NCBI GenBank assembly: GCA_053919585.1
Contig: CM132788.1
From: Euprymna scolopes
Taxonomy: Eukaryota
Strand: one strand, 5' to 3'
DNA: 64,000 nucleotides
The notes beneath the pieces are model-generated. The model did no database searches. It was not told where the DNA came from and saw only the letters and a program-made list of their open reading frames with translations. The translations under genes were made by a program, and so were the position numbers. Shown one piece after another: positions 9,201-62,139 of this stretch (its first letter is position 1; every line of letters begins with the position of its first letter).

Positions 9201-11600
9201 AGCTTTCAGACCCGTTTACACTGAACATCGTCAGACTTTTCCGATTCAAATGAAATGAAGGATTTCAATAAAAAATGTTTTGATAGAATGTAGGAAGGTG
9301 GCTTCACCCTAAGGTTATGGATTTCCAATTCAGATGAATAAAGAAACCTAATGAAGGTTGAAGGGGTATTGGTAAATCATGACTATTGATGAAAAGGTGT
9401 TGAATATAACACCGAGAATGATAGTTTAAGATTAGCAACTTGAAAGCCTACAAAGCGGCTAGGGCTTTTTCAGATTTCCAAGGCGTATGACCCCCTTAAT
9501 TTTGCCTTGCCTGTAACCATAAAGGGCAGGGTATTAAATTGGGATCAATGTGCCTAAGGAAATAAGTGACGAAATGAAAATAACTAGAGATTGAAATGTC
9601 ATTTTCAAGAGCTGTAGTTAATGATACTGAATTCTATAGTTTACATATTCTGTGATAGAAGCTTATGGGTTCGTAATATATGCCTGCTTAAATGGAAAAG
9701 CAAGTTCGTTTTTATTTCCTTCGTTAAGAAGGTAATGAACAGTGTCAACTTTGGAACAAATGGAGAAATACTGGCATTGAAACTTATAAAAACATTGTTT
9801 CAATTTATTGATATCCAGGTGGAGGCTCAGGACGTTATAAATTTGTTAATCAAAAAAAAAAAAAAAAAAATCTAAATTTGTTAATGGAATATCAAAAGTA
9901 AACGGATTAATCAAAGCTTTTGGGGATGAATTTAAATAACGAATAATGTTTCACTATGTTTATACAGATCAAAATCCAGCTGATATGTTAAAGGAATATG
10001 GTATGGTAAATGTTTACGAAATAGGAAAGTGGTGATAAGTGTTACAAGAAAGGCCTTCCTTTTCTTGTAAGAAAAACATTACGTAAGTAAAAATGAGATT
10101 AGATTGACCAAGATTCGAACTGCGTAAGCAAGGTTTAGGAATAGGGTCAGAAATGTAATTTTCGCATTGTTCAGTTTTCACATAAAATATTTTAGATATG
10201 TTGTTTGAAAAGGAATTTAATTATTCAATTCTTTTTATGAAAACTGAGTTAAAATAAGGTCAGTTAGAAGAACGAATAGAAAATTAAAAACATTGAAAAA
10301 TAAGTTAGGTCGGAAATAGCTTAGAATTGTCTGCAGAAATGGGTTGGACATGTGCAAACCACGCATGTTTAAGCCATGTGAGTTCAGGCCACGTGAGTCG
10401 AGCACGTTCTTGGATATGTGCATGACGTCATAGAAAATGAATTCTCAATATAGTTTGCTAGTTTTAAGAGATTAGAGACTGGTAGACAGTTGGAGACACG
10501 AGAGACAGCCGACATCGTCAGAGAAGCTGGGTCCCCCTTTGGAAGCGAAGGGTTAAAGTTTTAATCATGTAGTCGACTTTTAATTCCTGGAACCATCATC
10601 ACTGCAACCGGCCGAGTGTAATAAAACACATTTTGTAACTGCGTTGTGTTGTCATTCAACAATTAAAAGGTAATGTGAAACATCCTTTATATGAACATTG
10701 TGTCCACTCGTTATAATGTATAACCCATCTAAGTAATGTGTCCCCTCGCTATTATAAGTAATGGCAGTCCCCTCCTGTGTTATAAGAACTGATAACCCTC
10801 CTCTCTACAATATGTAATAAGTCCAGACTGTAAAATGTATGTCTTATTCTCTCTTCTCCCTCATCAATATACATGTCCGTAAATATGAATGTCCCCATCC
10901 TATCTCTTTAAAAGACCCCAACTACATAACATAAGAACCAAGTTGGCTTACCAATAAATTTAAAGATTGGCTTAAATACCCTTTAATGAGCATATCCTTT
11001 GGTCATAAGAAAAGAGTAAATATTAATTTCAATCAAGTAGTTAAAACAAAAACTGGGATTTGATGTTAAAAAATATTCTGGTTAAAATAAACTGAGTAAC
11101 AAGTATGTTATTCAAACCATTTTGTAAAAAAAAAAATAAATAAATAAAATAAACTGGAAATTTATTTGAGCGAAAATTGGTTAAGGCTAATCCAGACTGA
11201 ACATTTCTCCAAAGAAATTAGCTTGTTGAAATCACAGGACAAAAGTAATATATGTTCCCACTTTGGTCTCAAATTTATAGACTCGAATGGAATTGGGATT
11301 CTTAAATGGAATCTAAAAGGAGAATAAGCAAATGCTTATTTTAACTATGAACTGTATAACCCTGTGTTATTGCTTCATATGGGAACAGGTACCACCCTAA
11401 GTATTTTGCAAAGCCAGAAATAATTGTTCAACCTGTAAAAAGGTATGCTTTTGCATATAAATATCCTAAGCATCATATCAATGTAGTAAGACCCTTCAAC
11501 CATGTTGGAATTGACTGCACAGGTCATTTTTGGGTAAGGGATGAAGTGGGTGGAGGTACAGTGAAAATGTTTGCTTTGATATTTACTCGCCTTAATATGT
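6250..11600 (+). mobile_element. Heavily decayed BEL/Pao LTR retrotransposon (gag-protease-RT/RNaseH-integrase remnants)
   Basis: In order: QFNNVINSRKRMSDSAKLSYFLGYLK (gag, ~7150-7225), MLPTLTLKCG..VRCLIDCGSQ (protease, ~8312-8390), ISKAYDPLNFALPVTIKG (~9475-9530), QNPADML (~9970), RPFNHVGIDCTGHFW...KMFALIFT (integrase, ~11490-11590). Boundaries approximate; no LTR pair found. Confidence 0.8.
10153..10661 (+). repeat. Possible solo-LTR-like insertion inside the BEL/Pao remnant
   Basis: TGT...ACA ends, short CAYGYG repeats, GA-rich tract, AATAAA ~40 nt before the end; interrupts pol between RNaseH and integrase. No TSD confirmed. Confidence 0.35.
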
Positions 11601-14740: not shown

Positions 14741-15814
14741 TTACCCCATTAATTATCAAAAAGTATTTCAACTTCAAATCTGAAGTTTATATAGCTCTAC
14801 ATGCAACGAGTCCTCTGGCTAGATGTTGGTTGGGACAGGTGAAGGATATCACTGGCAATCTAGCTGGATATTTGTTCTGTAGCAGTTGATAGGCGATTGT
14901 CATACACGAATGTGAACAATTGAGTGGTCCAGGTCTTCCATCACTGACAAAAGCAGCCCTACTTAGGGACAGCATTGCATTTCAAGTTGAGATGATAATT
15001 GGAGTCCAAAATTTTGCTTAATCACGATCTTCCCTTGGGAGAAAAGTGCTGGATAGCCAGTATTGTAGTCAAATCAACTGAAAAATTTTAATTTAATTTT
15101 GGAGCTTAGGTTTGTATCCTCCAAAATAATTGGACACTTGAATGCGAAACATCCATAGGTTTGCATGAACTTGACTAAAACACACATGCAGTAGTTTGGT
15201 TGGTATTAATATCTTGTGCATTCATAAAGTTCAGGTGTTTGTAGCACTTACAGTGAGACTAAAATACTTCAGCACTGAAGCAAACTTGCTTTTTAATATG
15301 GTTAGTAATTAACAAGGAAGTTTAATTTGCATAGTGCTTTGCAAAATAAACTCCCATTAGCTATTTATTTTTACTATTAACCAGTATTATTTATGCATAT
15401 TTTCAACATTGATATTTAGCAAAACGGTCCATCCAGTGCGACAAGGGGGGGGGGCACAGAAATTTTGGCTCAAGTTTTCCTGGGCAATACCTAGAAATAG
15501 GTCCTACTAGTTTTAAATGAAATGCATGAGCAAACTTCCAGATAAAAAAGAAAATTGTTACAAAACCTTCGATTGTTTAACTTTCTATTCTGCCATATTA
15601 GATTTTGTGTTAGGATTTTAAAGAATTCAAAATCCAATCAATTTAAGTTTTCACTGATAAAGTTCGACTTTGTCCCAGTTGATTGAGTAACAAAAAAAAA
15701 CAAACAAAAAAAAAAACTTAATATTTCATCAATTCGACAGATTGCACCGTTGTGACCTTTTCTGTTTAGTTTTCAGTTCTTGACGGTTCACCCAAAGCCT
15801 CGTTTCCTCACTTT

Positions 15815-47830: not shown

Positions 47831-48887
47831 TTCCTATGCTTTTGCAAAAGCAAAAACATTTTTCCTGTAAAACAACCAAACACCATTATTTAAGTAACTA
47901 TATTACTGAACTGAGCCTTCAATAACTCGAAGGGTTGATATGCCATAAAACTATAAACCGTTAAATTCTTCTTGCAGAACTAAAATAAGTTTTTCTATTT
48001 TAAGAGTAATGGTACTTTGTCTAATTTGTCGGCATAAAAGATTTCAAACTTGAATCGGTTGCTTTCTATAAATATTTGGAAACGTTAAGAACTGCTATTC
48101 ATTGAGTCAATACAGTTAGTGAGAAAACGCATAGCTGATAGATTTATTCAGTTAATTACAAATTACTTGTAATGAGAAATGAATTTATTTTCAAACATAA
48201 CTCAATCCCAGAACTGAAGTATTTTAACGTTTTTAATATATATATATATTGGTTAAACGACTTGAAGTAAACATGAAATTTTCCTTTATAACAGTTAAAT
48301 CTCTACCCGCCATTGCTCTGAACATTGATTGCTTCGTTTATTGGTGTTACATAGCATGGATAGCAAAATGCATTGCTCTGATACTGTCTTTTGTTCGTGT
48401 CTTGTAAAACAAGGGGTTCATATTTAGTGTATAACTGTTATTGTATAAAGCATGTACATGAATTGGCACAATCTTATCACACCACACTATTTTTACTGTT
48501 CATAGATTTTTCGATAAACTGGGTTAGTCAATTTTTCAATTTTTTTTTTTTTTTTTATGCAAACTAATTTCCAGGCTCCATTTTGAAATGTTAAGGTCTG
48601 ATTGTTAAACGTCAATATTGTTCAACTACGGCTTTCACTTGGTCACTGTCGATCATGTTGAGCCGGCCAGGATGAACATATCTCCCTGAGAACTTATTGG
48701 AATTGAGCAAACGATTCTAGGCACATGAAACAAAAATGTAGTAGGCAAAAAAATAATAAATGTTCTGTCAGCAACAGTACAACTTCAAAATAGTCAATAT
48801 CGCCCACCTCCAGAAGAGAGGGAATTCCTGTCCGTGATAACCGTGGTAAAAGAAGACACACTCCAATCGCCAGAAACACCCACACAC

Positions 48888-48903
48888 ACAATTTGAAGGA
48901 CAC
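48888..48903 (-). other. 16-bp target motif / TSD, copy 3 (GTGTCCTTCAAATTGT)
   Basis: Immediately follows the 3' end of element A; 15/16 identical to 54676-54691 and 61837-61852. Confidence 0.85.
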
Positions 48904-49529
48904 GAAATTTATTTTATTTAGCAAAAAATTTTTACAAAATAAAAATGTGGCACAAGGCCGAAAAAGGGGGATGGAGGTTAATGTTGACCTAACTAACATA
49001 ACGTTAACTTAACTAGACTTTTTCACCAAAATACCAGAATCACTCTGTGGACATCCTACTTTAACCCCGCAAGTTACAAATATATATACATGATGTGAGG
49101 GGTTGGGGATAAAAATCTTATTTACAAAATCGGATGAAAAAATATACAATGATAAAAAGTGGTTAGTAAAAAGAACCCCCTCACTACTAATTGTGGCGGA
49201 TAAAAAGTTTTGTGAGTCGAAAAGATGTAGGTCCCACGAAAACTAACTTTATTCAAACACAACAAAAATGGCCTACATCGCTGGCAAAACAGTTTATCCG
49301 TCACCTAAAGGGCTGGGATTGGGGATTATCGAACCAAAAGCGGGGGGAAAAAAAAACAAAAAAACGGACGCTGGGACAGGGAAAACCAAAAAAGGGATTG
49401 GGACGATGACAACACGCATACTCTAGCTAAGTTAAAAATCAAACAAAAATGCCTAACTAGCCTACTCTAGGAGGTCCGATGCATGTCTGTTTGATCAGGT
49501 CACCCAAAATCCTTAAAAAAACCTAAGCA

Positions 49530-52500
49530 ACTCAAAAAAGAAATTCAAGACCAGCTCCATTCACTTTACACAGTCGCGAAATTTTCACCCATCTGTCGTT
49601 GAAATTCACAGGAGCGAGTTTCACCTTCTCCAGCTTAATTCGCATTTTCAATCGATATTTGAAAATGAGGACAAACTGGGGAGCAGTGAAGGTCTCATCT
49701 CCGTAAACCTCCTTCTGTCACGTCGTCCAAATCACGCCTCTCATAACTGCTAGTAAACACAGAAAAACATAGCATTCTTCTTTCTTCATGGTCGGCGCCC
49801 AGTTGCAGCACGAGGAAACCGACTCCAGCACAAAAAAACGCTCGCTCAGCATGCGAACCGTGAAGCCTTCAACTAACTCACACAACGGTCGAACGATGGC
49901 GCAGTGGAAGAAAGCATGATCAAGGTCTTCCTCCCATTCTCCGCATCAGACACAATTGGGTGTCTCCGTAAGACCCGCTGCGTAAAGTCTTTTGCCGACC
50001 CAGAGGGCATTTCGTATTACCAGCCAGGTGAGTGATGCCTTGCAATTATCGAAGCAGCTCGACCCAGGCGCCCAAAGCCATATTAAGCGGCGCTCCTCCT
50101 TCGTAAAACTGAACTCCTCAATCTTTTCGTCTCGAACAGATCCCCTCACTAAGACCCGATATAGCGCCTTGCAAGACAACAGCTGGGTGTCAGAGAGGCT
50201 TTCTTTGACCCGTAGAAGAAATCTCTCGGGAGTGGAAGTACTGATAGATGGTAAAGGATCAGGGGGTAGATATGAGAATTGCATACCTCCGCCCGGCCCT
50301 TCAAAGACAGATTTCTCAAGGCCCACAAATGAGATGCGACCTTGACCGCTTCCAATACCTCCGACCAATTTTTCTCCAGCTGGAGACCAGGGCCAAACCA
50401 GACGCCGAGTAGCTTGCATGGCCCATCAGTCCAACCAAAGGGTCCCTGAAGGGGCATACCCCTCCAGGCACCGATACGTAAGCCAATAGACTTAACGTAG
50501 TTAATTATGGCCCCTGTGACCTTCGCATACCGACTTGTTTCTATGTCAACGACTCTAATCTCGGCACTGCTCGTTACAAGCACAGTCACGTCATCAGCAT
50601 AGGCGGTATACTTTACCGGGGTAGAGCCACCTGGCAAAGTAATCCCGCAAAGGACCGGATTCACCCGAACCTGGCGCAAATATGGCTCAAGCGCCAGCAC
50701 ATAACATTGGGGATAACGGACAACCTTGACGGATCGATCTTGTTAACATGAAGGGTTTCGACCTCACCCCATTCACTTCTACCATAGCACCGGGGTTGGC
50801 ATACAAGAGGCAAATCCAAGAGCGAAACTGGGGACCAAACCCAGCCGAGCGAAGAACAGCCTCTAGGTAACGATGGTCTACTCTGTCGAATGCTTTGGAC
50901 TGATCTAAATTGATCAGCGCGGCTTCTGTCGACTTTTTCTACGATCAAGCGTATCGTGTGCAAATTGTCTTGAATCGTCCAGCCCTTAACAGAACAAGTC
51001 TGTTCGGGACTTATTAGACGGTGTAAGACAACCTGCAGACGATTTGCTAAGATCTTGGCCAAAATCTTTAACTCTGTGTTTAACATCGTTAAGGGCTGGA
51101 AATTACCTATCCCATCCCCTCCATTTTTATCTTTGCGTAACAATTTAATGATCCCCCTGGTAAAGTACTGAGGTATGCACCCGTTCCTAAACCAGGAGTT
51201 AAAAAGTATGGTCAGCAAAGGGATAAAAATGGGCGACAGCCTCAAATACACCTTGTAGCGCAGACCATCTATCCCAGGGGTCTTGTCTAGCCCGACCTGT
51301 TTCAAGGCCTCAATGACTTCTTCCTCTTTTATGCCACCTTCACATCTAGCTGCTTCAGTCGCCTCCAGGCGAGGAAAGTCAGCTAAATAGGTGTCAAACT
51401 GTTCAATAGTCAGACCGGGCACCTTGGTAAAAAGTTCCTGAAAATGAGTCCGAAAACCCTCCAAGATTCCGTCGTTTGAAGTTACGGTTCGTCCATCCGG
51501 CAATGTGACACTAGCGATGTGTCGATCTGCAGAACGTCGAAACTCCTCCACACGCAGTGACGCAGCCATGTTTGTTGCCTCGTTTGGCGCTCTTTTTAAT
51601 CTAGCCCTAACTAATAATCCCTGGTCCTCCCTGTTATCCAAGGAGTCCAGTTCAGCCTTAACTACAGTATAGCTAGCACTATCCCCCTCCTCCACCGCCC
51701 TTTCTAATCTATCTTCTAGCGCCGCTTTCGCTTCTCTAGAACTACGGTTGAACCGGCGACTAAAATCAGCAGCGAAGGACCTAATGACTTTTAAGGTTGC
51801 CCCACCACTTATTCCCGATGATAGCCCCCGTCAATTCCCTCTGTATTGTTAGTAGAAGCTGTTCCCGGAAGTCCTTCACATCGAACAACGTGTTGAACTT
51901 CCAGTAACTAGTCATCCTAGGTTTAACACTATCTAAGTTTACTCGAACCCGGACAAGCCTGTGGTCCGAATAAACTATACTATGAAAACTTGGACAATCT
52001 AAAAGCCCTAAGTCGACTCTCCTAACTAAGAACCGATCGATGCAACTCGAAAGTTGCACCAGATCAGAGCCGCGTCTACCTGTCCAAGTCCATGCTAAAT
52101 CCCCGGGTTTTTCGTTCCGAAATATATCGACAAGATCAAACTTGTCGACAAAGTCTCGAAACGCTTTAGCATCCCGGTTCCGGTTAGTATCCCTTGTGGT
52201 ATTAACCCCGCGATCTAACTCAGGATCCAGGACCGCGTTCCAGTCTCCCGCTAAAACTAACCGAGACGAATTCATGAAAGGCTTGATTCGCCGAAAAAAG
52301 GAAACTAGCTCAGTACGGTTATTGGGCACATAAACCCCAATAAAACGAAATGCCACATCCTTTACGGTAACATCCAGAACGAGTAATCTTCCCCCTGGAT
52401 TTGCATAAATAGGGTCACATGATGCATCAAGAATGCGCTTAACTAGCCAGGTAACCCCCCTTGCGTGGGTATCATAATGTGCTGAGTAGAGCTGAAAGTC

Positions 52501-52659
52501 TCTAAGGAGCACGTCATGATAGTCACTTGGAATAAAGTGAGTCTCCTGTAGACAACATACATCCACACCAAGGCGTTGAAGGTCGCGTGCAACTCGAAGT
52601 TTACGAGAGGCGTCCCTCAACCCTCGGACATTTAAGCTAGCTAATCTTAAAGAAGCCAT
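49530..52659 (-). pseudogene. Family A ORF2 (APE endonuclease, reverse transcriptase, C-terminal Zn motif), frameshifted
   Basis: LASLNVRGL, CLQETH, GDWN, IDRF, YSDH; PGIDG, FQPLTMLN, YADD; C..CGE..EDLDHAFFHC. Split over ORFs 51781-52659, 50661-51695, 50149-50700 and 49946-50419. Confidence 0.95.
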
Positions 52660-52669
52660 CTTGAGCTAC

Positions 52670-54511
52670 TTAGGGTTGGGAATCCTGAACAAACATAGAC
52701 GGTGTCAAGATACTGACAGCAGTCCCCATAGACCCAGTGGTCATCTCAGTGGTGATGGACCCGTCTGGGGACAAACCGCCAATATCTAATGGAAATGTTA
52801 GTTTGAGGGCCCTATATAAAGATGGATGAACCTTTATGGGGACCCGCCCAACACATGCCTTTTTGATTTCAGTTAAATCTTTATCATTAAAAAAAGCAGC
52901 TGGAGGAAAAATGTTATATGCTGAATTTGCTTCCTCCAGCATATACCATAAGCCTATGGCTTCTTCCCGGTTTCTTACAACCGTAAGAAGCCTTCTTGCA
53001 GTTTTCTGGGTTCACTACAAGTTTTTTTTACTGTTTTAAATGCATAAAGTGCCCTATAGTCTTTTCTATTATGATTGTTCATGAGTTTCCTGTTCCGGGG
53101 TAATTTTGTAGACGTTCTTGCCTGTATAGTAGGGGAGCTTTTTTTTCCGGGATTCAGCTTCCGTAGAGGGACTTCGGGGCCTTTTTTCCCCCCCGGGGTC
53201 GCAGGAGGCAAGGGAGCAGGCGGGGGAGGAGGGGGAGGCATATCAGTTTTCATTGGGGAAAGGGGAGGGGTATTTTGAGGGGTGTTACAGGGGGTTTTAA
53301 AAGGGGATGGTTTGGGTGATTTTTTGGGGGGGGCAAGCGTTGTCATTTTTTTTTCTCTTTTTGGCAATGCTGTAGTGACAGGTGGGGGTAATGTCTTAGC
53401 TGGGGATGGACGTGTTTTTGTTGGAAGAGTCGGGAAAGAGTCGGAAAGGTTTGGTTTCTTTTTTTTTCGGTTTTGCGATCTTGGTCTAGTCGGTCTTTTA
53501 GTTTGCTTAAAACTTTAAATTTGTTGCCTCCTGGATCCTTTGAACACATTGCTTCTATTCTATCCTTCTCCAGGCTTTGTGCATAAGACTTTGGGGATGA
53601 AAGTTTTTTATTTTTCACCAATGTCCATTCTTGAGCTTTAGCTGGCGATTCCTTTGTTGTATTGCACAATTGCTCGAATTGGTCTAGTGAGAGTCTCTTG
53701 ATTGGACTTGCGTGAGTGCTTGTGACGGGAGGAGTATTGGTAGAGTCTTATGTGGCGTAACTGTACCCTATTTTGGTTGTCTGTTGCGGGCTTCGAATTG
53801 TTTGCGTTCTTTTGGGGCATGTGAAAGTGAGGTGCCCTACCTCTCCACATATCCAGCATGCTGGGCGGCGTCCGGCTACCACTAGTGGTAGTTTGTCTTC
53901 TCCTGCTTCAATATAAGGAATTTTACTGAAAGCTTCCTTATTCAGTAAAATTTCAAAAGTCCATGTTCCCTGGAAACTATCCAAATTAACACCTGTTATT
54001 TCTCCAAATTGGAGAAACGCACATAAATATTCACCAGGGACAGTCACTGGAACCTCAAAAACTGAAACTGTTGTTCTTCTTCTTCCCATGTATTCCATTC
54101 TTAATATGTGGTCTTTAGTAATAATTTCCTGTTTGGACATATTAATGCATTCCTCCTCGGTCTTGAATAGGGAATTCCAGGTGTTGTAGCCCTTACATTT
54201 CGTTATCCTTTCAGGTCTCAAGCCTGTTGTCGCGATTAGCTTTGCCACTTGTTCTTCTGTTGAACGAATTAACTTTGTCTTTCTGTCTACAACAAAGAGA
54301 AGGATAGTTTTTTGGTGATCTCTTCCAACTTTTGAAGATCCAGCTTGACACCTTTATCTGTGACAAATTCCGCACACAGCTTAGCTTTCTCAATGAAATC
54401 TTTCACGTCGATTTTTATGGCTGGAGGCTTTGTCCAACCCTGCTTTTCCATGTTATCATTGGGATTCATGTTTGGTAAAGTTTCCATCGGCGTCCCGGTG
54501 GCTGCCGCCAT
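52670..54511 (-). pseudogene. Family A ORF1 (nucleic-acid-binding protein), frameshifted
   Basis: Starts MAAATG; probable RRM-like region; CWICGEVGHLTFTC knuckle; Pro/Lys-rich linker; C-terminal block ending DSQP*; homologous to B ORF1. Confidence 0.9.
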
Positions 54512-54675
54512 CGCCGGTGGAAGCAGAAAGGAAAAATAACAGTCTTATAACAAGTAACGTAGGAGGAAGAGAAGAGAGAGGAATAACAAATTTAACAACA
54601 ATGTATAACAATAATAATAATAACAGCGCAATAAATATCGGATACGAACCACAAGAGTGATAATCAAAAGCGACC

Positions 54676-54691
54676 ACAATTTGCAGGACAC
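54676..54691 (-). other. 16-bp target motif / TSD, copy 2 (GTGTCCTGCAAATTGT)
   Basis: The only sequence separating the 3' end of B from the 5' UTR of A. Confidence 0.9.
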
Positions 54692-56398
54692 AGTATTTAT
54701 TTTCGGAAAATTTACAAAGTAAAAATCAGAAAAATTTGGCACAAGGCCGAAGATGGGGAAGGGGAAAGGACGGTCTTCTCAGACTAGTGCTAACTAATCT
54801 AACCTAACTAGTTCCTACTTTCACTCTACTTACACCATAATACCACATTCATACTATACATCCATCAGCGTATACATCCTTCATCAATTACCATAAGAAC
54901 ATCATGCCATGATAACCTAATTAAAACCCATAAGAAAGGGGGGTTTGGGAAGATAAAAATTTTATATACAAAATACAAATGAAGTATTTACAATGTTAGT
55001 AACACAAGACCCCCCCCCCCGTTGTTAAACTATGGCAGATGCACTGATTCGCCAGTCGAAAGGGTGATGCAGGTCCAAACACTTTATTTAAAGCACCTCT
55101 TACGAAAACTTCGAAAGGGAACCCGCATCTCTGGCGAATCAAGCGATCTGTCACCTAATTTGGGAGGGGAGTGGGGTTAGAAAAAAAAAAAAACTTAAAA
55201 GGGGCCTAATGATCGCTATCACACACTAGCTAGGTTATGAACAAAGAAGCCTAAATAATGGTCCTACTCTTGCCTATATCGTGACCTATTCTGGACTAAA
55301 AACGAGTCAGGGCTGACGTTCGTTCCTGTCACCCAAAATTCTTCTTCCTAAGGAACATCCAAGAACCAGTCAAGACTTGCTTCTCTCACCCGACACACAC
55401 GCGCAACTGACACCCACCTTTCAACAAAGTCTGACGGAGAGAGTCTAACTCTCTCGGCCTTGATACGATCCTTTAAATAATGACGGAAGAGTCGTATAAG
55501 GTCGAGGGGAGCGAAGTCCTCAGATCCATAGACCACTTTCATATGTGTGTTCCAGATAACACCTCTCATCACAGCTAGCAAGGTCAAACACAAATCTTTT
55601 CTGAGCCTATCCGTTGTCGGAGCCCAATTGCTACAGACATTAATAGGAACCAAGGTTAATGAGGATGTTTTTAGTATGCGGACCATGAGACCTGTAACAA
55701 ACTCAATCAGCGGCGCCACGATGCGACAAACGAAGGCGTGACAAAGTCTCGTCCTCATCGCCGCACCGTTTACAAATAGGCGAGTCCACCAAGCCAGCTG
55801 AGTGGAGTCTCTTACCGACCCAGAGAGCATCCCGAATTACCAGCCAGGTCAGGGAAGCCTCGTCGTTAGTGAGGCATCCTGACCCAAGGCCAGATTGAGC
55901 GGAGCTGCTCCTTCGCCAAAGGGAGCCTCTCACCGACGACATCCGTTACAGATCCCCTCACTAAAACCCGATATAATGCCTTTCGGGACAACAGCAGAGT
56001 GTTAGAGAGGCTTTCCTTCACTCTTAAGAGGGACTTCAGTGCGCGCCGGCACTCGCGGTAGAAGGGACATTCACCTCGGGGCAACCTGTGTGCCTCCCCC
56101 TCGGAGTAGTGCACCCCTCTCAAAGCCGGGAAGGCTTTCTTGGTGTCCTCCATCCAGAGGCAACCGTTTTCCCTATCTTGTGTGCACATTCGATCTAGAT
56201 AGAGCCGTAGCGTGTATAGCCGAATCTCCACTTTTGGCATACCTAGACCGCCTTCAGAAGGATGTAGGTAGCAGACATCGCGACAGACCTTAGGGGCCCT
56301 TCTAAGCCATAAGAAGTTGAAAAGAGCCCTCTGCAAATATAGCAGTATATCTGACGGGATTGGAAGCACTGATAGACGATAAATAGCGATTGGATATA

Positions 56399-58023
56399 CA
56401 GTGATGATCATATTTATTGGCACGGTAAAATAAAAGTTAAATTTTGTCTAATAAATTCTAAAAAAGGGATTAAATTAAAGAAAATAACAAAGTATATTAT
56501 GTATTTTTAACTGGCCTTTCCAATGCAGCAATCGGATTTTAGAAAAAATAAATAACAAAGGAACAACAAACATAATTGCAAAAAACCCTTGTTCAAAATT
56601 ATTGGCACGATTTATTTAATAATCAATTGTATAGCCTTTGGCCTTGATTACCTTCCTCAGTCGCTTTTCATAGTTTACAACCAAGTTGTTGCCCTCTTCA
56701 GTAGTAATTTTAGCCCACTCTTCCTGACAATAATCCTCCAATTGAATAAGATTCTTAGGCTTCCTTTGCATTACCCTCAATTTTAATGTTCTCCATAAAT
56801 TTTCAATTGGATTAAGGTCTGGGCTTTGTGATGGCCACTCCAAAACATTAATATGATTGTCCTCAAGCCATTTCTTAGTCAGTTTAGCCGAATGCTTTGG
56901 GTCATTATCTTGCATGAACCACCAACGACGACCAAGTGAGAGCTCTTTAGCAGAGTCTTTCAGGTTTTCATCCAATATTTTAACATAATCTTCCTTTTTT
57001 ATGCTACCTGTGACCTTAACAAGTCGCCCTGGTCCAGAGGCAGCAAAGGATCCCAAAAACATCAAACTGCCTCCACCATGCTTCACTGTGGGTATGGTGT
57101 TCTTAGGCAGGAAAGCTTCGCCAGATTTTCTGTAAATATAAGACACTTTATTATGGCCAAATAACTCTATTTTCGTTTCGTCAGTCCATAGAACACGTTT
57201 CCAGAATGCAACATCTTTATCAATATGACGTTTTGCAAAGGCTAGCCTTGCTTTCAGGTGCATAGGCTTCAATAAGGGAGTCTTTCTCGGACGACATGCT
57301 TTTAAACCAGCTCTCTTCAAAACTCTACCAACTGTATGTCAAGATACATTCACTCCAGAGGTGCTCTGTTCATCAACAATCTCCCCAACAGAGATCCTTG
57401 GGTTTTGTTTTACTTGTCGAACAATTTTCCGTTCATCTCTTGGAAAGAATTCTTTTTCTCCCTCTACCCTCTAAACTCATAACGTGGCCTTGCGATTTGA
57501 ACTTGTTTATTATGGCTCTAACAGTGGATTTGGGAAGGTTTAGCTTCTTTGAAATCTTATCATAGCCCTCCCCATTGGTATGGCATGCTATAACAAGCTT
57601 CCTGACGTCTTCGCTGTGTTCCTTAGTTTTAACCATGGCGATTGAAAATTATAATTTAGTCACTTATAATAGTTTAAATAAATCGCTATCTAAAAATTAT
57701 CTGAAAAATTATTCACTGAATTAGCGTTAAACAAGCATAATATGGCTATAAAAAAGTTCAGAAAGCACGTAAACCGGAAATTGATATTATACTGATACTA
57801 AAAGAAAAACAAAGCCGTGCCAATAATTTTGAACAAGGGTTTTTTGCAATTATGTTTGTTGTTCCTTTGTTATTTATTTTTTCTAAAATCCGATTGCTGC
57901 ATCGGAAAGGCCAGTTAAAAATACATAATATACTTTGTTATTTTCTTTAATTTAATCCCTTTTTTGGAATTTATTAGACAAAATTTAACTTATTTTACCG
58001 TGCCAATAATATGATCATCACTG
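56399..58023 (-). mobile_element. Tc1 DNA transposon (DD34E) with ~210-bp IR/DR-type TIRs and TA TSD
   Basis: TA|CAGTG...CACTG|TA; TIRs 56399-56609 and 57816-58023, each bounded by direct repeats of TTATTGGCACG. Confidence 0.97.
56616..57636 (-). pseudogene. Tc1 transposase with one frameshift (~57440) and one in-frame TGA (~57340)
   Basis: MVKTKEHSEDVRK HTH start, GRKR NLS-like segment, WTDETK, QDNDPKH, SPDLNPIENLW; 34 residues between the second D and E. Confidence 0.95.
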
Positions 58024-59887
58024 TATGTGGGTATTACACACCTCCGCTCTCCCCTTTAATGAAATGTTTCTACTGATCCACTGAAGCTGCAGACCGTACC
58101 ACTTTCAGAACCTCCGACCAATTTTTCTCCAGCTCGAGGTCAGGACCAAACCAGACGCCGAGTATCTTGCAAGGCCCATCGCTCCAACTGAAGGGGCATA
58201 CCCCTCCAGGCACCAATGCGCAAACCCGAAGACTTGTCGCAGTTAATTTTGGCCCCTGTTACCGTTTCATACAATCTGATTTCTACACCGACGACACTAA
58301 TCTCAGCACTGCTCGTTACAAGCACAGTTACGTCGTCGGCATAGGTGGAGTACTTCGCCTGGGCATCCGCACCTGGCAAAGTGATTCCGCGTAGAACCGG
58401 ATTCACCCTTAGCCTGCGCAAAAATGGTTCGATCGCAAGCACATATAGCATGGGTGATAACGGGCACCCCTTGACGAATGGACCGTGACAAACTGAAGGG
58501 TCTCGACCTCTTCCCATTTACTTCCACCATCACCGCGGGGTTAGCATAGAGAAGATGAACCCAAGAGCGAAATTGCGGCTTCGGTCGTCGAAAGACGAGA
58601 AAAGTCAGCCAAATAGGTGTCGAACTGTTCTAATGACAGACCGGGTTCCATGGAAAAAAGCTCCTGGAAATGGGATCTAAACGCCTCCAACACACCCTGG
58701 TTTGTGGTCACGGTACGCCCGTCCGGCAATGTGACACGAGCGATGTGCCTATCAGCCGCTTGCCTAAGCTCCTCTGCATGCAGTTCAGCGGCCATGTTTG
58801 TTGCTTCCTGGAGCATTCTTTTTAACCTAGCCCTAATCGCTAAGGCTTGGTGCTCCTTTTCAGCAAAGGAGGCAAGCCGAGCCCTAATTATATTAACGCT
58901 AGCACTATCCCCGTCCTCCACCGCCCGATCTAGTCTAGAGCCTAGTGTCACTTTAGCTGCCCTAGAATCTAGATTGAGTCTTTTGCTAAAGTCAGCAGCA
59001 AAGGACCTAATGGCTTCCTTAACTTTTACTCACCACTTATTCCCAATAATTGCCCCCGTCAATTCCCGCTGTAGGGTTAGTAATAGTCCGTCATGGAAGC
59101 CCTTCACATCGAACAACGACGTGTTGAGCTTCCAGTAACCGGCTAATCTAGGCTTAGGTCTATCTAAGTTTACCCGTACACGAACAAGTCTGTGATCCGA
59201 GTAAACTATATTGTGGAAACTTGGACAATCCAATACTCCTACATCGACTCACCTAACTAAGAACCGGTCGATATAGCTCAAGCGCTGTATCGAATCGGAG
59301 CCGCCTCTACCTGTCCAAGTCCACACTAAGTCACGGGGCTTTTCATTTCGGAACTTGTCGATAAGATCAAACTTATTCACGAAATAAAACGGCATCCCGA
59401 TCTCTGTTAGTTCCCCTAGATGTTAACCCAAATCGATCTAACTCGGGATCCAGGACGGCGTTCCAGTCTCTCGCTAAGATAACCATTCTAACATCTATGA
59501 ACTGCTCCATCCGCCGAAAAAAAACCAGCCAGCTCAGAATGGCTATTGGGCGCATAAACCCCAATAAGACGTAATGCCCTACCCTTTATGGTAACATCCA
59601 AAACACAGTCTTCCCTCCGGATCCAAGTAAGACGGGTCACACGACGCATCTAGAGACCTTTTAACTAGCCAGGAAACCCCTCTCGAGCGAGAATTATAGT
59701 GCGCTGAGTAAGCCTCAAAGGTCTTAGACAGTGCACCCAAATGGTCACCAGGAATAAGATGGGTTTCCTGCACACAACATATATCCACTCCGAGGTGCTG
59801 CAGGTCCAAACTCAAGCGCCATTTGCGCGAGTCGGCCCTTAGCCCTCGGACATTTAAACTAGCAAGCTTGAGATCCATGGTGGTGCC

Positions 59888-61641
59888 TTAGGGTTGGGAA
59901 CCAGGAACGAACATCGCGGTCGTGAGCATGCCGACGGCTCTCGTGAGGGAATAAGTACCCATCGCAGTATCGATGAGGCCGTCACGAGAGATACCACCGA
60001 CATGCAAAGGATAGGTTAGTTTTGCTATCCTATATAGGGAGGGGTGCATTTTTACCGGGATCCTCCCAACACAACATTTTTTAAGGTTTTTTATGTCGCT
60101 ATCTTTAAACACAAGGGGAGTGGGGAGGTTGAAGGCTTTATTTGCCTCTTCGAACATTAGCCAAAGATCCTTGGCCTCTTCTTTTTTCCGAACAACGGTT
60201 AAGATTCTTTTGGCATTTGGAAAATTAGCAGGGGTATCTACTAGTTTCCCCCCCCCACCTCCTTGAACTCAATTAGTTTTGTGAGGTCGGTTCCTTTAAA
60301 GTTCTTGTGGTTGTTAATAGCGGCTTGGTTTATTATGCAAATGTCTTTGCCAGGGAGGTAGAGAGTCTTTTTCTTGTGTTCAGGCGAGGGGGTGATGTCC
60401 ATTGCAGAATGTGTGTTTTTAGGAGATGCAAGGGGAGTGTTGTGAGTGGTCGCAGAGGTGGATGGAATGGGAGAGGAGGGTTTGTGTTTTTTTTGAAAGG
60501 CTTAAGGGTGTTAGTTTAGGCTGTTTATAAGGGACCGGAGTTGTAACTGGAGAAGGCATTTTGAGGGGGGAAGGAGTTATTGGCTTTGTAGGAGACTGGG
60601 TGATAGGGTTGGTTAGGGATTTGGGGCTTGGTTTCGGAGAAGTGGGTTTACATGGGGATTTGGGTGATGGGCGTTGAGCATCTAATTTCTTTTTTAATTT
60701 GACGACTTCGAGATATTTTTCTTTTCCGGGGTCATTTTGCAGCATTGCCTGTTCTTTCATTTGGTCCAGGCTCAGGCGTCCAGGGGTTTTTCTCCCAGGG
60801 GCGATTTGCCAGGGTTCTCCCCTGAGGATTTCGTCTGTTTCGTTGGTAGGCGGCTTGGGAACACTTTTTGATGAGGATCCCAAGTGTTGTCCAATGGATT
60901 TTTTGGTGTTTGGAGGAGGTTTTTTTAAGGGGCATTCTGACGTGAGGTGGCCAATTTCGCTGCAATTCCAGCATGTCGGTCTTCGGCCAGCCACTATTAT
61001 AGGGAGTTTCTCCTCTCCCGCCTCGGAAGAAAGGGATCGCATCGAAGTTTGCCTTATCGAGGAGGATGTCGTATGACCATATGCCATGAAACTCGTCCAC
61101 CTGCACCGAAACCATTTCGCCATATTTTAGAAGGAAGGCGCCGATGTGTTCTCCTTCAATGTGGTGAGATACATTAAAAACGGACACAGTAGTCCGACGT
61201 TTTCCCATATATTCTGATCTTAGAATATAGTTTTGAGTGATTATCTCTTTTTGTGAGATAGTTAGGCAGTCTTCTGGGGAGTTAAAAAGTACACTCCATG
61301 TGTTGTAGCCCTTGCACTTGACGATGCGCAAAGGTCTAAAACCAGCTGTAGCCAAAAGGTTGGTGATGATATCTGTGCTTGCTCTTATTACTTTTTTTAA
61401 CTTTCTGTCGACTATAAATATAGTCAGACACTTTTTTTTGGATTTCCTCCAACCTTGGCACGTTGACGATTAATCCTTTGTCGGTGACAAGTTCCAGGCA
61501 TTGTTTTGCCTTTTCAATAAATTCGTTGACGTTGATATCCACTTTCGGTGGTTTGGTCGAAGTGTTTGGCGTAGCAGTAGTGCCGTTTTCCGCTTCCAAG
61601 ATGTCGACGACAATGGGCGTTTGGCTCGCCGAAGCGGCCAT
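59888..61641 (-). pseudogene. Family B ORF1, frameshifted
   Basis: Starts MAASASQ; KCKGYNTW, SEYMGKRR, CWNCSEIGHLTSEC, SP/KP-rich linker, C-terminal block ending GSQP*. Confidence 0.9.
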
Positions 61642-61836
61642 AGCCGAACCATTAAAAAAAGACGTTTAAAAGAAAGTCCAAAAAAACAACTGTTAAAAAT
61701 AACAGTAAGACAAATGAAAGAAAAAAAAAGCGTCGTGTAGAGAAAAAAAATCCGACGGTAATAAAAATAAAAGGGTAAAAATCACTGATAGAATAACGCA
61801 CGAGACAAGAGTCAAAAGCAACTTGAAATCACAAAG

Positions 61837-61852
61837 ACAATTTGCAGGACAC
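61837..61852 (-). other. 16-bp target motif / TSD, copy 1 (GTGTCCTGCAAATTGT)
   Basis: Directly precedes the B 5' UTR and follows a predicted initiator (GGCA+1GT, A at 61853). Confidence 0.9.
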
Positions 61853-62040
61853 TGCCGACTCGTCTCTAGCCTCCTGCTTTAATAGTTGACGGGAATTATC
61901 CATTTGCATAATCACATGAGAAAGAAACGTGATTTTCCCAGAGTTGCATGGGGGTAAACGCTCATAAAAACCCCCGGACGCCATCTTGGAATTCTCTTTT
62001 CCCCCCAACCGGTGACACAACAGACGTACCCGAGGTAAGC
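61853..62040. promoter_or_regulatory. Putative divergent Pol II promoter module, copy 3 (points into the Tx1 tandem)
   Basis: Minus strand: ATGCAAAT (61909-61902), 17 nt, TATTAAAG (first T 61884), AGTCGGC, CAGT with A at 61853. Plus strand: CATAAAAA (61963), CGCCATCTTGG (61979), GAG|GTAAGC (62035). Confidence 0.6.
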
Positions 62041-62139
62041 TCTTTTTCCCCTCATTTTAGTTATTGCTACTTCTGCTACAACACACCTTCTAGAACGGCA
62101 TTCTCCTCATACTCGTGTCACATCTTTGGTTTTCTGTAG

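What the first reader, a model, noticed from the sequence alone, without database searches (positions are those of the whole stretch)
48888..61852. Head-to-tail stack of two different Tx1 retrotransposons punctuated by one 16-bp target sequence
Seen: on the minus strand the order is motif-B-motif-A-motif, with motif GTGTCCTGCAAATTGT at 61852-61837 and 54691-54676, and GTGTCCTTCAAATTGT at 48903-48888. Nothing else separates the elements, and A and B are clearly diverged families with different UTRs. Established: APE-type elements make TSDs, and several Tx1-clade families are sequence-specific for U2, 5S, tRNA-array spacers, microsatellites or DNA transposons. Inference: two families independently hit the same site, each insertion regenerating the target. 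The target matches none of those classes that I can recognise.
Basis: partly seen in the sequence, partly recalled or inferred. Interest (0 to 1): 0.9.

Follow-up and report, generated by a model that had tools for sequence, protein, structure and literature searches.

The report
Two LINEs stacked in one LTR
Two dead Tx1-type LINE retrotransposons sit head to tail in the same 16-bp spot, just after the predicted transcription start of a solo LTR in a cephalopod genome, and the LINE group lands about 33 bp downstream of TATA boxes in four LTR-type repeats, so it may borrow their promoters.

Summary
Three copies of the 16-mer (one with a mismatch) bracket element B (7145 nt, with a nested Tc1) and element A (5772 nt), and nothing else lies between them.

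The target is now identified. It is the first 16 nt after the TATA/initiator of a 406-nt LTR ("LTR-1") of a 4.6-kb gypsy-like retrotransposon. At least 1284 empty copies of the site exist in the 5.9-Gb genome. In the window the LTR is solo.

B-type elements occupy this exact site at six loci, with unrelated DNA beyond the LTR at the five loci whose downstream flanks were read. These are repeated targeted insertions with a 16-bp duplication. A is the only A-type copy there. Its family (over 1000 copies) normally inserts at CCCCATTAG in another LTR.

B's sub-lineage also uses two more LTR families. In all four target repeats the duplicated bases start 32-34 nt after a conserved TATA box. The LTR-1 B copies carry a 17-nt leader copied from another LTR, starting where that LTR's transcription start is expected. 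This points to promoter borrowing.

Tx1 families that target LTR retrotransposons, 16-bp duplications and stacked insertions are already published (PMC4494074). This is therefore a new member of a known kind, with an interesting promoter-proximity rule. Two earlier notes of this scan cover the same window; their ids and what I made of them are in the full report.

The parts
61853..62080 (-). 5' part of the solo LTR-1 (U3). It begins TGTAGCAG at 62080 and has a TATA-like box TATTAAA at 61884-61878, which reads TATAAAA in intact copies. It ends with the CA at 61854-61853, the predicted initiator.
   Evidence: blastn against the intact element in L032 gives 95% over 62080-61830. The LTR pair is aligned. 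All 30 sampled LTRs carry CTATAAAAGCAGG 32 nt before the motif.
61837..61852 (-). Target-site duplication, copy 1 (GTGTCCTGCAAATTGT).
54692..61836 (-). LINE B, 7145 nt and dead. It has an ORF1 zinc knuckle, an APE endonuclease and an RT. It lacks about 0.5 kb of RT and holds a nested Tc1. Its tail ends ...CCGAAAATAAATACT with no poly(A).
   Evidence: Pfam; comparison of A and B. The other LTR-1 B copies are 6.07-6.11 kb.
61820..61836 (-). The first 17 nt of B, CTTTGTGATTTCAAGTT. This is a leader copied from another LTR (LTR-3): 4 nt of flank plus that site's 13-bp duplication GTGATTTCAGTTT. The LINE body proper starts at GCTTTTGAC.
   Evidence: All five full-length LTR-1 B copies share it. LTR-3-resident copies read TTG(C/G)TT GTGATTTCAGTTT GCTTTTGAC, and their tails are followed by GTGATTTCAGTTTGGGATT.
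56396..58026 (.). Nested Tc1/mariner DNA transposon, 1631 bp, with terminal inverted repeats of about 200 bp starting (A)TACAGTG. The transposase remnant is on the minus strand.
   Evidence: DDE_3 and HTH_Tnp_Tc3_2 in 57338-56619(-); inverted repeats I1-I3.
54676..54691 (-). Target-site duplication, copy 2, shared by the 3' end of B and the 5' end of A.
   Evidence: L072
48904..54675 (-). LINE A, 5772 nt and dead. It has an APE endonuclease, an RT, frameshifts, and a deletion near 50226. Its tail ends ...GCTAAATAAAATAAATTTC with no poly(A). It is the only A-type copy at this target in the genome.
   Evidence: Pfam; genome censuses; 95-97% identity to the A' family; RNA reads diverge on both sides of 50225/50227.
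48888..48903 (-). Target-site duplication, copy 3 (GTGTCCTTCAAATTGT, one G>T change).
   Evidence: All RNA reads from other LTR copies show the unmutated base at 48896.
48726..48887 (-). 3' part of the solo LTR-1 (the rest of R, plus U5), ending ...TTTGTTTCA at 48726.
   Evidence: blastn gives 98% over 48903-48726. RNA reads from other copies diverge exactly at 48726 (table 7).
48721..48725 (-). Downstream half of the LTR's own probable 4-5 bp integration duplication: TGTGC here against TGTGT at 62085-62081. This fits a solo LTR formed by LTR-LTR recombination.
   Evidence: Read directly. No internal LTR-element sequence occurs anywhere in the window.

Best explanation
A 4.6-kb gypsy-like LTR retrotransposon left a solo LTR at this locus. 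Two Tx1-type LINEs then entered the same spot of that LTR one after the other by target-primed reverse transcription.

The bottom strand was nicked right after the CA of the predicted initiator, 32 nt after the first T of the TATA box. The top strand was nicked 16 bp further on. Each insertion is therefore flanked by the same 16 bp, and each leaves an intact copy of the target for the next element. That produces motif-B-motif-A-motif. This part is shown by the junctions, the empty sites and the recurrence of B.

B belongs to a small sub-lineage of a family of about 2000 copies. The sub-lineage lands on GTG...T|G sites 32-34 nt downstream of TATA boxes in at least three LTR families (LTR-1, LTR-3 and LTR-4).

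Inferred: because it lands about 15-17 nt after the LTR's start site and in the sense orientation, the LINE is transcribed from the LTR promoter with a short leader. The 17-nt LTR-3 leader carried by all LTR-1 B copies is the trace of this.

A is a one-off from a different large family whose usual target is CCCCATTAG in a fourth LTR type (LTR-2). It most likely arrived either through B-lineage proteins acting in trans on an RNA that shares the conserved 3' block, or through a weak secondary activity of its own endonuclease. Both options are inferred.
For: Target identity:
- The motif occurs 1667 times with up to 1 mismatch, against 39 for the control.
- 30 of 30 sampled sites have the window's outer flanks, and there are 1284 empty 28-mers.
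- Pairs 4.17 kb apart are 99%-identical LTRs around PR-RT-RNaseH-IN genes, with a polypurine tract before the 3' LTR.
- Only the two LTR halves are present in the window.

Recurrence of B:
- Five 5' junctions read motif|CTTTGTGATTTCA(A/G)GTTGC, at C5, C6, C19, C24 and C31.
- Five 3' junctions read AATAAATACT|motif, at C6, C19, C24, C31 and C46.
- The copies are 95.5-97.9% alike, yet their downstream flanks share only the 160-168 nt of remaining LTR.

A is unique at this site. Its 3' 300 nt and its endonuclease region match the A' family at 95-97%, and that family sits in 6.1-kb arrays at CCCCATTAG.

The 16-bp duplication also flanks A, whose RNA had no reason to carry LTR-1 sequence. The stagger is therefore set by protein and DNA, not by RNA homology.

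Other targets of the B sub-lineage:
- LTR-3 has 239 empty sites, LTR-like pairs about 6.0 kb apart, and a 13-bp duplication.
- LTR-4 has 774 copies, nine 3' and five 5' junctions, and one element bracketed at C24:286375/292469.
- None of the 28 copies with the exact B-type 5' end follows CCCCATTAG.

TATA rule: the distance from the first T of the TATA box to the first duplicated base is 32 (LTR-1), 33 (LTR-3), 34 (LTR-2) and 32-34 (LTR-4). For LTR-4 I predicted this before looking, and it was then found.

Precedent: Tx1 families that prefer LTR retrotransposons, a 16-bp duplication, tandem insertions sandwiching a duplication, two unrelated target regions for one family, and trans-mobilised partners are all described in PMC4494074.
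Against: - No transcription start was seen. In four poly(A) RNA-seq runs nearly all reads over the motif continue into U3, and no pile-up of read starts occurs at 48903. Depth was low and 5' ends are poorly sampled, so this neither confirms nor excludes the start site.
- In LTR-2 the LINEs lie antisense to the LTR. A polypurine tract AAAAAAGGGGGG abuts TGTAAAATG, and the nearest RT gene in L032 lies on the opposite strand. The TATA box there would have to work as an antisense promoter.
- B's endonuclease region is no closer to the other LTR-1 copies than to the family at large (all 96-97%). A lineage-specific endonuclease change is therefore not demonstrated.
- The mode of A's arrival is not tested.
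- The assembly of the stack was not checked against long reads.
Confidence: 0.72

Rival explanations
1. One reading: families A and B each evolved, independently, an endonuclease specific for this 16-bp sequence.
For: Both elements are flanked by exactly the same 16 bp. Tx1 endonucleases can be sequence-specific, as described for Tx1 in the introduction of PMC4494074.
Against: A is the only A-type copy at the motif. Its endonuclease region is 96-97% identical to more than 2000 candidate copies, including copies in arrays whose members end at CCCCATTAG. The B family at large also sits elsewhere, and its LTR-1 sub-lineage uses other sites too.
Confidence: 0.08
2. The landing place is set by the promoter rather than by a DNA word. 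The LINE complex is tethered to, or guided by, a TATA-bound initiation complex and nicks at a fixed distance of about 32-34 and 44-48 nt from the TATA box. This would resemble the way Ty3 or Dictyostelium TRE elements use Pol III factors.
For: Four target repeats with dissimilar duplicated sequences (CCCCCATTAG, GTGATTTCAGTTT, GTGTGGAAAGT, GTGTCCTGCAAATTGT) all place the first duplicated base 32-34 nt after the first T of a conserved TATA box. One of the four was predicted in advance. About a quarter of B-type tails have diverse flanks.
Against: - The three B-lineage sites share |GTG at the left end and T|G at the right end, which suggests sequence recognition.
- Insertions are concentrated in a few repeat families rather than spread over TATA promoters in general.
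- The same pattern arises if only copies that land behind a promoter can go on to breed (selection).
- The upstream context of the diverse off-target insertions could not be read.
Confidence: 0.15
3. The several B copies in LTR-1 are not independent LINE insertions. One B-bearing LTR was spread passively, by retrotransposition of its LTR element or by segmental duplication.
For: All five full-length copies share the same 17-nt leader and the same junctions, as copies of one locus would.
Against: - Flanks diverge exactly at the LTR's 3' end in all compared copies, so this is not segmental duplication.
- A 6-kb insert 17 nt into R, carrying its own AATAAA, would block or be lost in LTR-element replication (inference from the strong-stop transfer mechanism).
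- None of the compared copies continues into LTR-element internal sequence downstream, and the window copy is solo.
- The stack in the window needs re-targeting in any case.
Confidence: 0.04
4. The stack is an assembly artefact that joins two separate LTR-resident LINEs.
For: Repeats of this kind are hard to assemble. The junction could not be confirmed in independent runs: only 4 sampled words, with shares of 0.25 or less.
Against: A and B are only about 73% identical, so a collapse is unlikely. The motif|A 5' junction exists nowhere else in the assembly, so there is no second locus to have been mis-joined. LINE and SINE stacks around a regenerated target are common in this genome and in a related species' contig.
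Confidence: 0.02

Closest known systems
Crocodilian Tx1-Mar families with SINEU, and Tx1-8_Crp / Tx1-4_AMi (Kojima 2015, PMC4494074)
   Same: These are Tx1-clade LINEs that insert at defined positions inside other transposons. A 16-bp duplication is reported (AGGTTCCCATCAGCAT), along with tandem insertions that sandwich a duplication. Related families use two target regions with no recognisable similarity. Short partner elements share the target. Two families prefer specific LTR retrotransposons. Co-transcription from the flanking transposon is proposed.
   Different: Here the host is a cephalopod and the targets are four LTR-type repeats. The sites lie at a fixed 32-34 nt from a TATA box, and a transduced leader gives direct sequence evidence that transcription started in the previous target. 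The paper's main text, as far as I searched it, does not say where in the LTR elements the crocodilian families insert.
Tx1L in Tx1D of Xenopus laevis (as summarised in PMC4494074)
   Same: The type member of the clade. It is a LINE that inserts specifically into another transposon. Its ORF2 is the best Swiss-Prot structural match to the B-like RT.
   Different: The target there is a non-autonomous piggyBac-type DNA transposon, not an LTR. Only 23% identity over the aligned RT and C-terminal half.
Keno, Kibi and Koshi, other target-specific Tx1 families (as listed in PMC4494074)
   Same: The same clade, showing sequence-specific insertion into multicopy targets.
   Different: Their targets are U2 snRNA genes or microsatellites. 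No RNA gene was found at any target here (Rfam).
R2 elements in 28S rRNA genes
   Same: They work alike in one respect: a site-specific LINE without a promoter of its own that is co-transcribed with its target (cited in PMC4494074).
   Different: R2 has a restriction-like endonuclease and belongs to another clade. It depends on Pol I and a self-cleaving ribozyme. Here the presumed driver is a Pol II TATA promoter of an LTR, and the leader is kept.

Membership tests
Tx1 clade of non-LTR retrotransposons (L1/Tx1 group) | ORF2 with an N-terminal APE-type endonuclease followed by a reverse transcriptase | tested here: met
   Exo_endo_phos and RVT_1 occur in that order in both A and B. The related-species copy L086 adds zf-RVT at the C-terminus.
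Tx1 clade of non-LTR retrotransposons (L1/Tx1 group) | RT closer to Tx1 than to L1 or other clades | tested here: met
   An AF2 model (pLDDT 88) was made of the RT and C-terminal half of a B-like ORF2 from L086, which is 79-91% nucleotide-identical to B. Foldseek against Swiss-Prot ranks P14381 Transposon TX1 first (E 1e-25, TM 0.77, 23% identity). Three L1 ORF2 proteins follow (E 6e-22 to 4e-21, 16-18% identity), then R2 and R1. By sequence, the best solved structure is human L1 ORF2p (E 4e-52), far ahead of R2. No RT tree with reference clades was built.
Tx1 clade of non-LTR retrotransposons (L1/Tx1 group) | Target-sequence preference with target-site duplications, which is frequent in the clade but not universal | tested here: met
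   Searches show recurrent, precise junctions at four repeat-borne sites.
Tx1 clade of non-LTR retrotransposons (L1/Tx1 group) | Placement within the clade by RT phylogeny (RTclass1-type analysis) | not tested
The names of database homologues were uninformative.
Ty3/gypsy-like LTR retrotransposon (the target, LTR-1) | Two near-identical direct LTRs (TG...CA), a polypurine tract before the 3' LTR, and the gene order PR-RT-RNaseH-IN | tested here: met
   In L032 the LTRs are 99% identical and 4169 bp apart. GGGGGGAG lies before the 3' LTR. RVP, RVT_1, RNase_H, Integrase_H2C2 and rve occur in that order.
Promoter-dependent (co-transcribed) site-specific LINE | The transcript starts in the flanking target, upstream of the LINE | tested here: inconclusive
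   For: the 17-nt LTR-3 leader on all LTR-1 B copies begins 27-30 nt after the LTR-3 TATA box. Not seen: read starts at the LTR-1 site in RNA-seq. No 5'-end data were available.

The most novel reading that the evidence does not exclude
This cephalopod Tx1 group is a promoter-capturing LINE. Its lineages home to the first 15-17 transcribed bases of LTR-retrotransposon promoters, always 32-34 bp after the TATA box and across at least four unrelated LTR-type repeats. They hop between LTR families while carrying a piece of the previous host's leader. In the strongest form, the initiation complex itself, rather than a DNA word, guides the nick.
Probability: 0.3. Interest if true: 0.8.

Novelty: new member of a known kind. 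Interest (0 to 1): 0.55.

Why it matters
Site-specific LINEs are studied as natural models for safe, targeted gene insertion. Two open questions are how they change targets and how promoterless copies get transcribed.

This genome offers a compact natural experiment:
- closely related LINE copies (96-97% identical in the endonuclease region) sit at four different repeat-borne sites;
- all four sites share one geometric rule relative to a TATA box;
- one lineage still carries the leader of its former host.

If the rule holds, it shows one class of retrotransposon systematically parasitising the promoters of another. It would also give a tractable system for asking whether target choice lies in the endonuclease or in the transcription machinery. 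As a catalogue entry it is ordinary: another target-specific Tx1 lineage, with decayed copies at this locus.

Tried and rejected
1. Small-RNA gene as target. Earlier notes on other pieces of this genome describe U2-targeting Tx1 elements. Rfam found nothing at gathering score in the window. It found no snRNA in seven loci with stacks and short partner elements at E up to 0.01, and nothing around either target in L032. My by-eye resemblance of the shared 3' block to U2 is therefore dropped.

2. Direct start-site evidence from RNA. Only contig-level runs held the LTR. Raw poly(A) reads (X35-X38) laid on 48720-54719 showed no start pile-up at the motif, which is inconclusive. They did confirm the LTR end at 48726 and showed that the A' family is transcribed.

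3. Independent support for the B-A junction from other runs. There were too few sampled words to tell.

4. First structure model (P0004, endonuclease plus RT). pLDDT was 47, so it was unusable and was not searched.

5. Clade assignment from database names. All close homologues are unnamed cephalopod proteins, and the Atlas names were generic.

6. My own early idea that the main target CCCCATTAG is also the sense-strand start of R of its LTR. This is rejected. The polypurine tract and the neighbouring RT gene show the LINEs are antisense to that LTR. Only the TATA distance survives.

7. A as a chimera with a B-type 5' head. The alignment shows instead a 16-nt duplication-like extension of A's own head.

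8. Fetching the upstream flanks of the other B copies. Pattern searches with embedded N were used instead.

9. Complex prediction was not used, because no protein-protein claim is made.

Full report
**The observation**

The 16-mer GTGTCCTGCAAATTGT occurs on the minus strand at 61852-61837 and 54691-54676. A copy with one mismatch lies at 48903-48888. There is no other match in the window with up to two mismatches, against 0.03 expected.

Between the copies lie two LINEs on the minus strand.
- B (61836-54692) has an ORF1 zinc knuckle, an APE endonuclease and an RT.
- A (54675-48904) has an APE endonuclease and an RT.

Both are dead, broken by frameshifts and internal deletions. B also holds a 1631-bp Tc1/mariner element at 56396-58026 with long inverted ends.

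A and B are related but distinct. They share 65-75% nucleotide identity in ORF2, their UTRs are largely unalignable, and they share a conserved 3' block, TTCGGCCTTGTGCCA. Neither has a poly(A) tail.

**What the target is**

The motif is strongly over-represented in this 5.9-Gb genome: 1667 hits with up to one mismatch, against 39 for the reversed control. All 30 sampled sites are empty sites with the window's outer flanks...CTATAAAAGCAGGAGGCTAGAGACGAGTCGGCA|motif|GTGTGTGGGTGTTTCTGG. A 28-mer spanning both sides occurs 1284 times.

Many sites come in pairs 4.17 kb apart. In L032 these pairs are 99%-identical 406-nt LTRs (TGTAGCAG...TTTGTTTCA). They flank protease, RT, RNase H and integrase genes, and GGGGGGAG precedes the 3' LTR. 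This is a small gypsy-like element.

The motif starts 32 nt after the first T of the TATA box and directly after a CA. This is where a TATA-driven start site is expected, so the motif is essentially the first 16 nt of R. This is inferred from the sequence.

In the window only the two LTR halves are present (62080-61853 and 48887-48726), with no internal sequence. They are bounded by TGTGT and TGTGC. The LTR is therefore solo.

**Is the site hit repeatedly?**

For B, yes.
- Five 5' junctions genome-wide read motif|CTTTGTGATTTCA(A/G)GTTGC, on C5, C6 (this window), C19, C24 and C31.
- Five 3' junctions read AATAAATACT|motif, on C6, C19, C24, C31 and C46.
- The elements are 6.07-6.11 kb long.
- Their last 1.5 kb are 95.5-97.9% alike, but downstream they share only the 160-168 nt of remaining LTR and then diverge.

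These are separate loci, not duplicated segments. Passive spread with the LTR element is unlikely. A 6-kb insert 17 nt into R, with its own AATAAA, should abort or be lost in LTR replication, and none of the compared copies continues into internal LTR-element sequence.

For A, no. Its 5' junction and its 3' junction with the motif are unique to this window.

**The families behind A and B**

A's last 300 nt are 95% identical, and its endonuclease region 96-97% identical, to a family with over 1000-2000 candidate copies (A'). That family forms 6.1-kb head-to-tail arrays and ends at a different target...CATA|CCCCCATTAG|GAGTCAAAAACATTTTACA. Short partner elements of about 380 nt that share the LINE 3' block stack there too.

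That target lies 20-30 nt inside the 5' end of another LTR (LTR-2, about 1950 first-look candidates). The LINEs are antisense to it. A polypurine tract AAAAAAGGGGGG abuts TGTAAAATG in four loci, and in L032 the nearest RT/RNase H gene is on the opposite strand.

B's endonuclease region is also 96-97% identical to about 1900 candidates, and apart from the three LTR-1 copies the 40 scored ones lie at other places. B-type tails are followed by three kinds of sequence:
- TACCCCATTA (17 of 43);
- GTGATTTCAG... (13 of 43);
- diverse sequences (the remainder).

**The B sub-lineage and its leader**

The true 5' end of the B type is GCTTTTGACTCTTGTC. Of the 28 exact copies of this 5' end, none follows CCCCATTAG. 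They follow GTG-type sites instead.

- **LTR-3.** The site reads GCTAACTGGAT-TATAAGA-G-GGATGGAGTGAACTGAATTTTGGTT|GTGATTTCAGTTT|GGGATT. There are 239 empty sites and many pairs about 6.0 kb apart, which I read as LTR pairs. The duplication is 13 bp.
- **LTR-4.** The site reads ...TATAAAA-GAGCCGTCTTCTTTATTTTGGGCGT(CA)|GTGTGGAAAGT|GCAGAGAG. There are 774 copies, with pairs 3.5-3.85 kb apart. I found nine 3' and five 5' junctions, and one 6.09-kb element bracketed on C24.
- **LTR-1.** This is the window's target.

The 17 nt that all LTR-1 B copies carry before GCTTTTGAC (CTTTGTGATTTCAGGTT) equal four bases of LTR-3 flank plus the LTR-3 duplication. The founder RNA was therefore made from a copy resident in LTR-3. 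It began 27-30 nt after the LTR-3 TATA box, where a start site is expected. This is sequence evidence that these LINEs are transcribed from the host LTR's promoter.

**A geometric rule**

The distance from the first T of a conserved TATA box to the first duplicated base is 32 in LTR-1, 33 in LTR-3 and 34 in LTR-2 (on the LINE's strand; the box is conserved in about 1550 copies). For LTR-4 I predicted 32-34 before walking upstream, and found it.

The LINE body starts 44-48 nt after the TATA box in all four. Chance is an unlikely explanation. By my estimate, a TATAA pentamer in a 3-nt window has a probability of about 0.01 per target at 36% G+C.

Two readings remain. Either selection keeps only lineages whose site lies behind a promoter, or the initiation region itself guides the nick. 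The three B-lineage sites share |GTG on the left and T|G on the right, which favours recognition of a short DNA word plus selection.

**How A got there**

A is flanked by the same 16-bp stagger, although its RNA had no LTR-1 homology. The stagger is therefore a property of protein and DNA.

A's own endonuclease gene is of the A' type. The two live options are trans-mobilisation by B-lineage proteins, for which the shared 3' block gives a handle, and a weak secondary activity of A'-type enzymes. I cannot separate these.

**Classification**

The close protein homologues that carry an organism name are all from cephalopods (Acanthosepion pharaonis, Argonauta hians). By sequence, the best solved relative is human L1 ORF2p.

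A confident model of the RT and C-terminal half of a B-like ORF2 from a related species' contig (L086) matches the Xenopus Tx1 protein best among reviewed proteins, ahead of three L1 ORF2 proteins. L1-Tx1 elements are known to be expanded in coleoids (PMC8967140).

**Comparison with the literature**

Kojima 2015 (PMC4494074) describes crocodilian Tx1 families with these features:
- insertion at fixed positions of a mariner element;
- a 16-bp duplication;
- tandem insertions sandwiching a duplication;
- two dissimilar target regions;
- partner SINEs sharing the target;
- two families preferring LTR retrotransposons;
- a proposal of transcription from the flanking transposon.

The present case is therefore a new member of that kind. 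What I did not find described is the constant TATA distance over four LTR-type targets and the transduced leader that documents a hop from one LTR family to another.

**Limits**

- RNA-seq gave no start-site signal.
- The stack was not verified with long reads.
- The LTR nature of LTR-3 and LTR-4 rests on pair spacing alone.

**Earlier notes of this scan**

- Note s1-259190 suggested promoter hijacking at this site. My results agree and extend it.
- Note s1-259255 proposed that an older copy at 14741-14756 is followed by a transition-related version of the same target. That sequence, TACCCCATTAATTATC, is a variant of the LTR-2 target, not of this motif.
- Notes on U2-targeting Tx1 elements elsewhere in the genome (for example s1-279846) led me to test for U2 here, with a negative result.

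Noticed in passing
window:56396-58026: A 1631-bp Tc1/mariner element is nested in B. It has inverted ends of about 200 bp (98% complementary over 181 nt) and a DDE_3 / HTH_Tnp_Tc3_2 transposase remnant.
   Followed up: partly
window:336-751 (+): A 5'-truncated LINE tail or short partner element sits at the main target of the group. It is bracketed by CCCCATTAG and followed by GAGTCAAACATTTTACA.
   Followed up: partly
window:14650-14760 (+): An older, diverged LINE tail is followed by TACCCCATTAATTATCAAAAAG. This is a variant of the LTR-2-type target, not of the 16-bp motif.
   Followed up: partly
L035:1090-1470, L046:694-1470, L054:1830-2213 (G000 loci): SINE-like units of about 380 nt begin (C)TGATGGGGAAGGTCTCCTAGCGGCTTCGGCTGCAGGGAGACAGG and end with the LINE 3' block and tail. 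They are stacked one to three deep behind LINEs at CCCCATTA. No Rfam family matches them.
   Followed up: partly
L086:1-9250 (contig of a related species, ENA ERZ26051807): A LINE-LINE-short-element stack has junctions TA|CCCCGCCGACT and TA|CCCCTCAAAATC. The middle LINE has a nearly intact ORF2 in two frames. A 5S rRNA gene lies 1.2 kb further on, at 10379-10499(-).
   Followed up: partly
window:48920-52720: Poly(A) RNA-seq reads of three runs cover the 3' two-thirds of A at 92-99% likeness. They come from other, expressed A'-family copies, and coverage is 3'-biased. Most pairs have the first mate on the minus strand, and A>G is the commonest difference (47-52 places against 30-33 for G>A). 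Library strandedness is unknown, so the sense of the transcripts and any RNA editing remain open.
   Followed up: no
G000:C46:23.7-56.6 Mb: About ten B-type copies at the LTR-3 site share identical flanks (TTGCTT|GTGATTTCAGTTT|GGGATT) on one chromosome. This suggests that a LINE-bearing segment was amplified there.
   Followed up: no
L036:1814-1825, L054:1817-1830; L032:3334-3344: The heads of A' LINEs and of the short partner elements begin (T)TCGTCT. The same heptamer lies just upstream of their target in LTR-2 (CCATTCGTCTCATA|CCCCC). This could be an old leader remnant or a coincidence.
   Followed up: no
G000:C8:157474703, C9:78426501, C19:35764792, C22:57124750, C27:100218190: Five single exact motif copies are followed by T or A instead of the LTR's G or B's C (one search lists seven such sites; the other two form a pair on C27). 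They could be LTR variants or other insertions, but could not be read.
   Followed up: no
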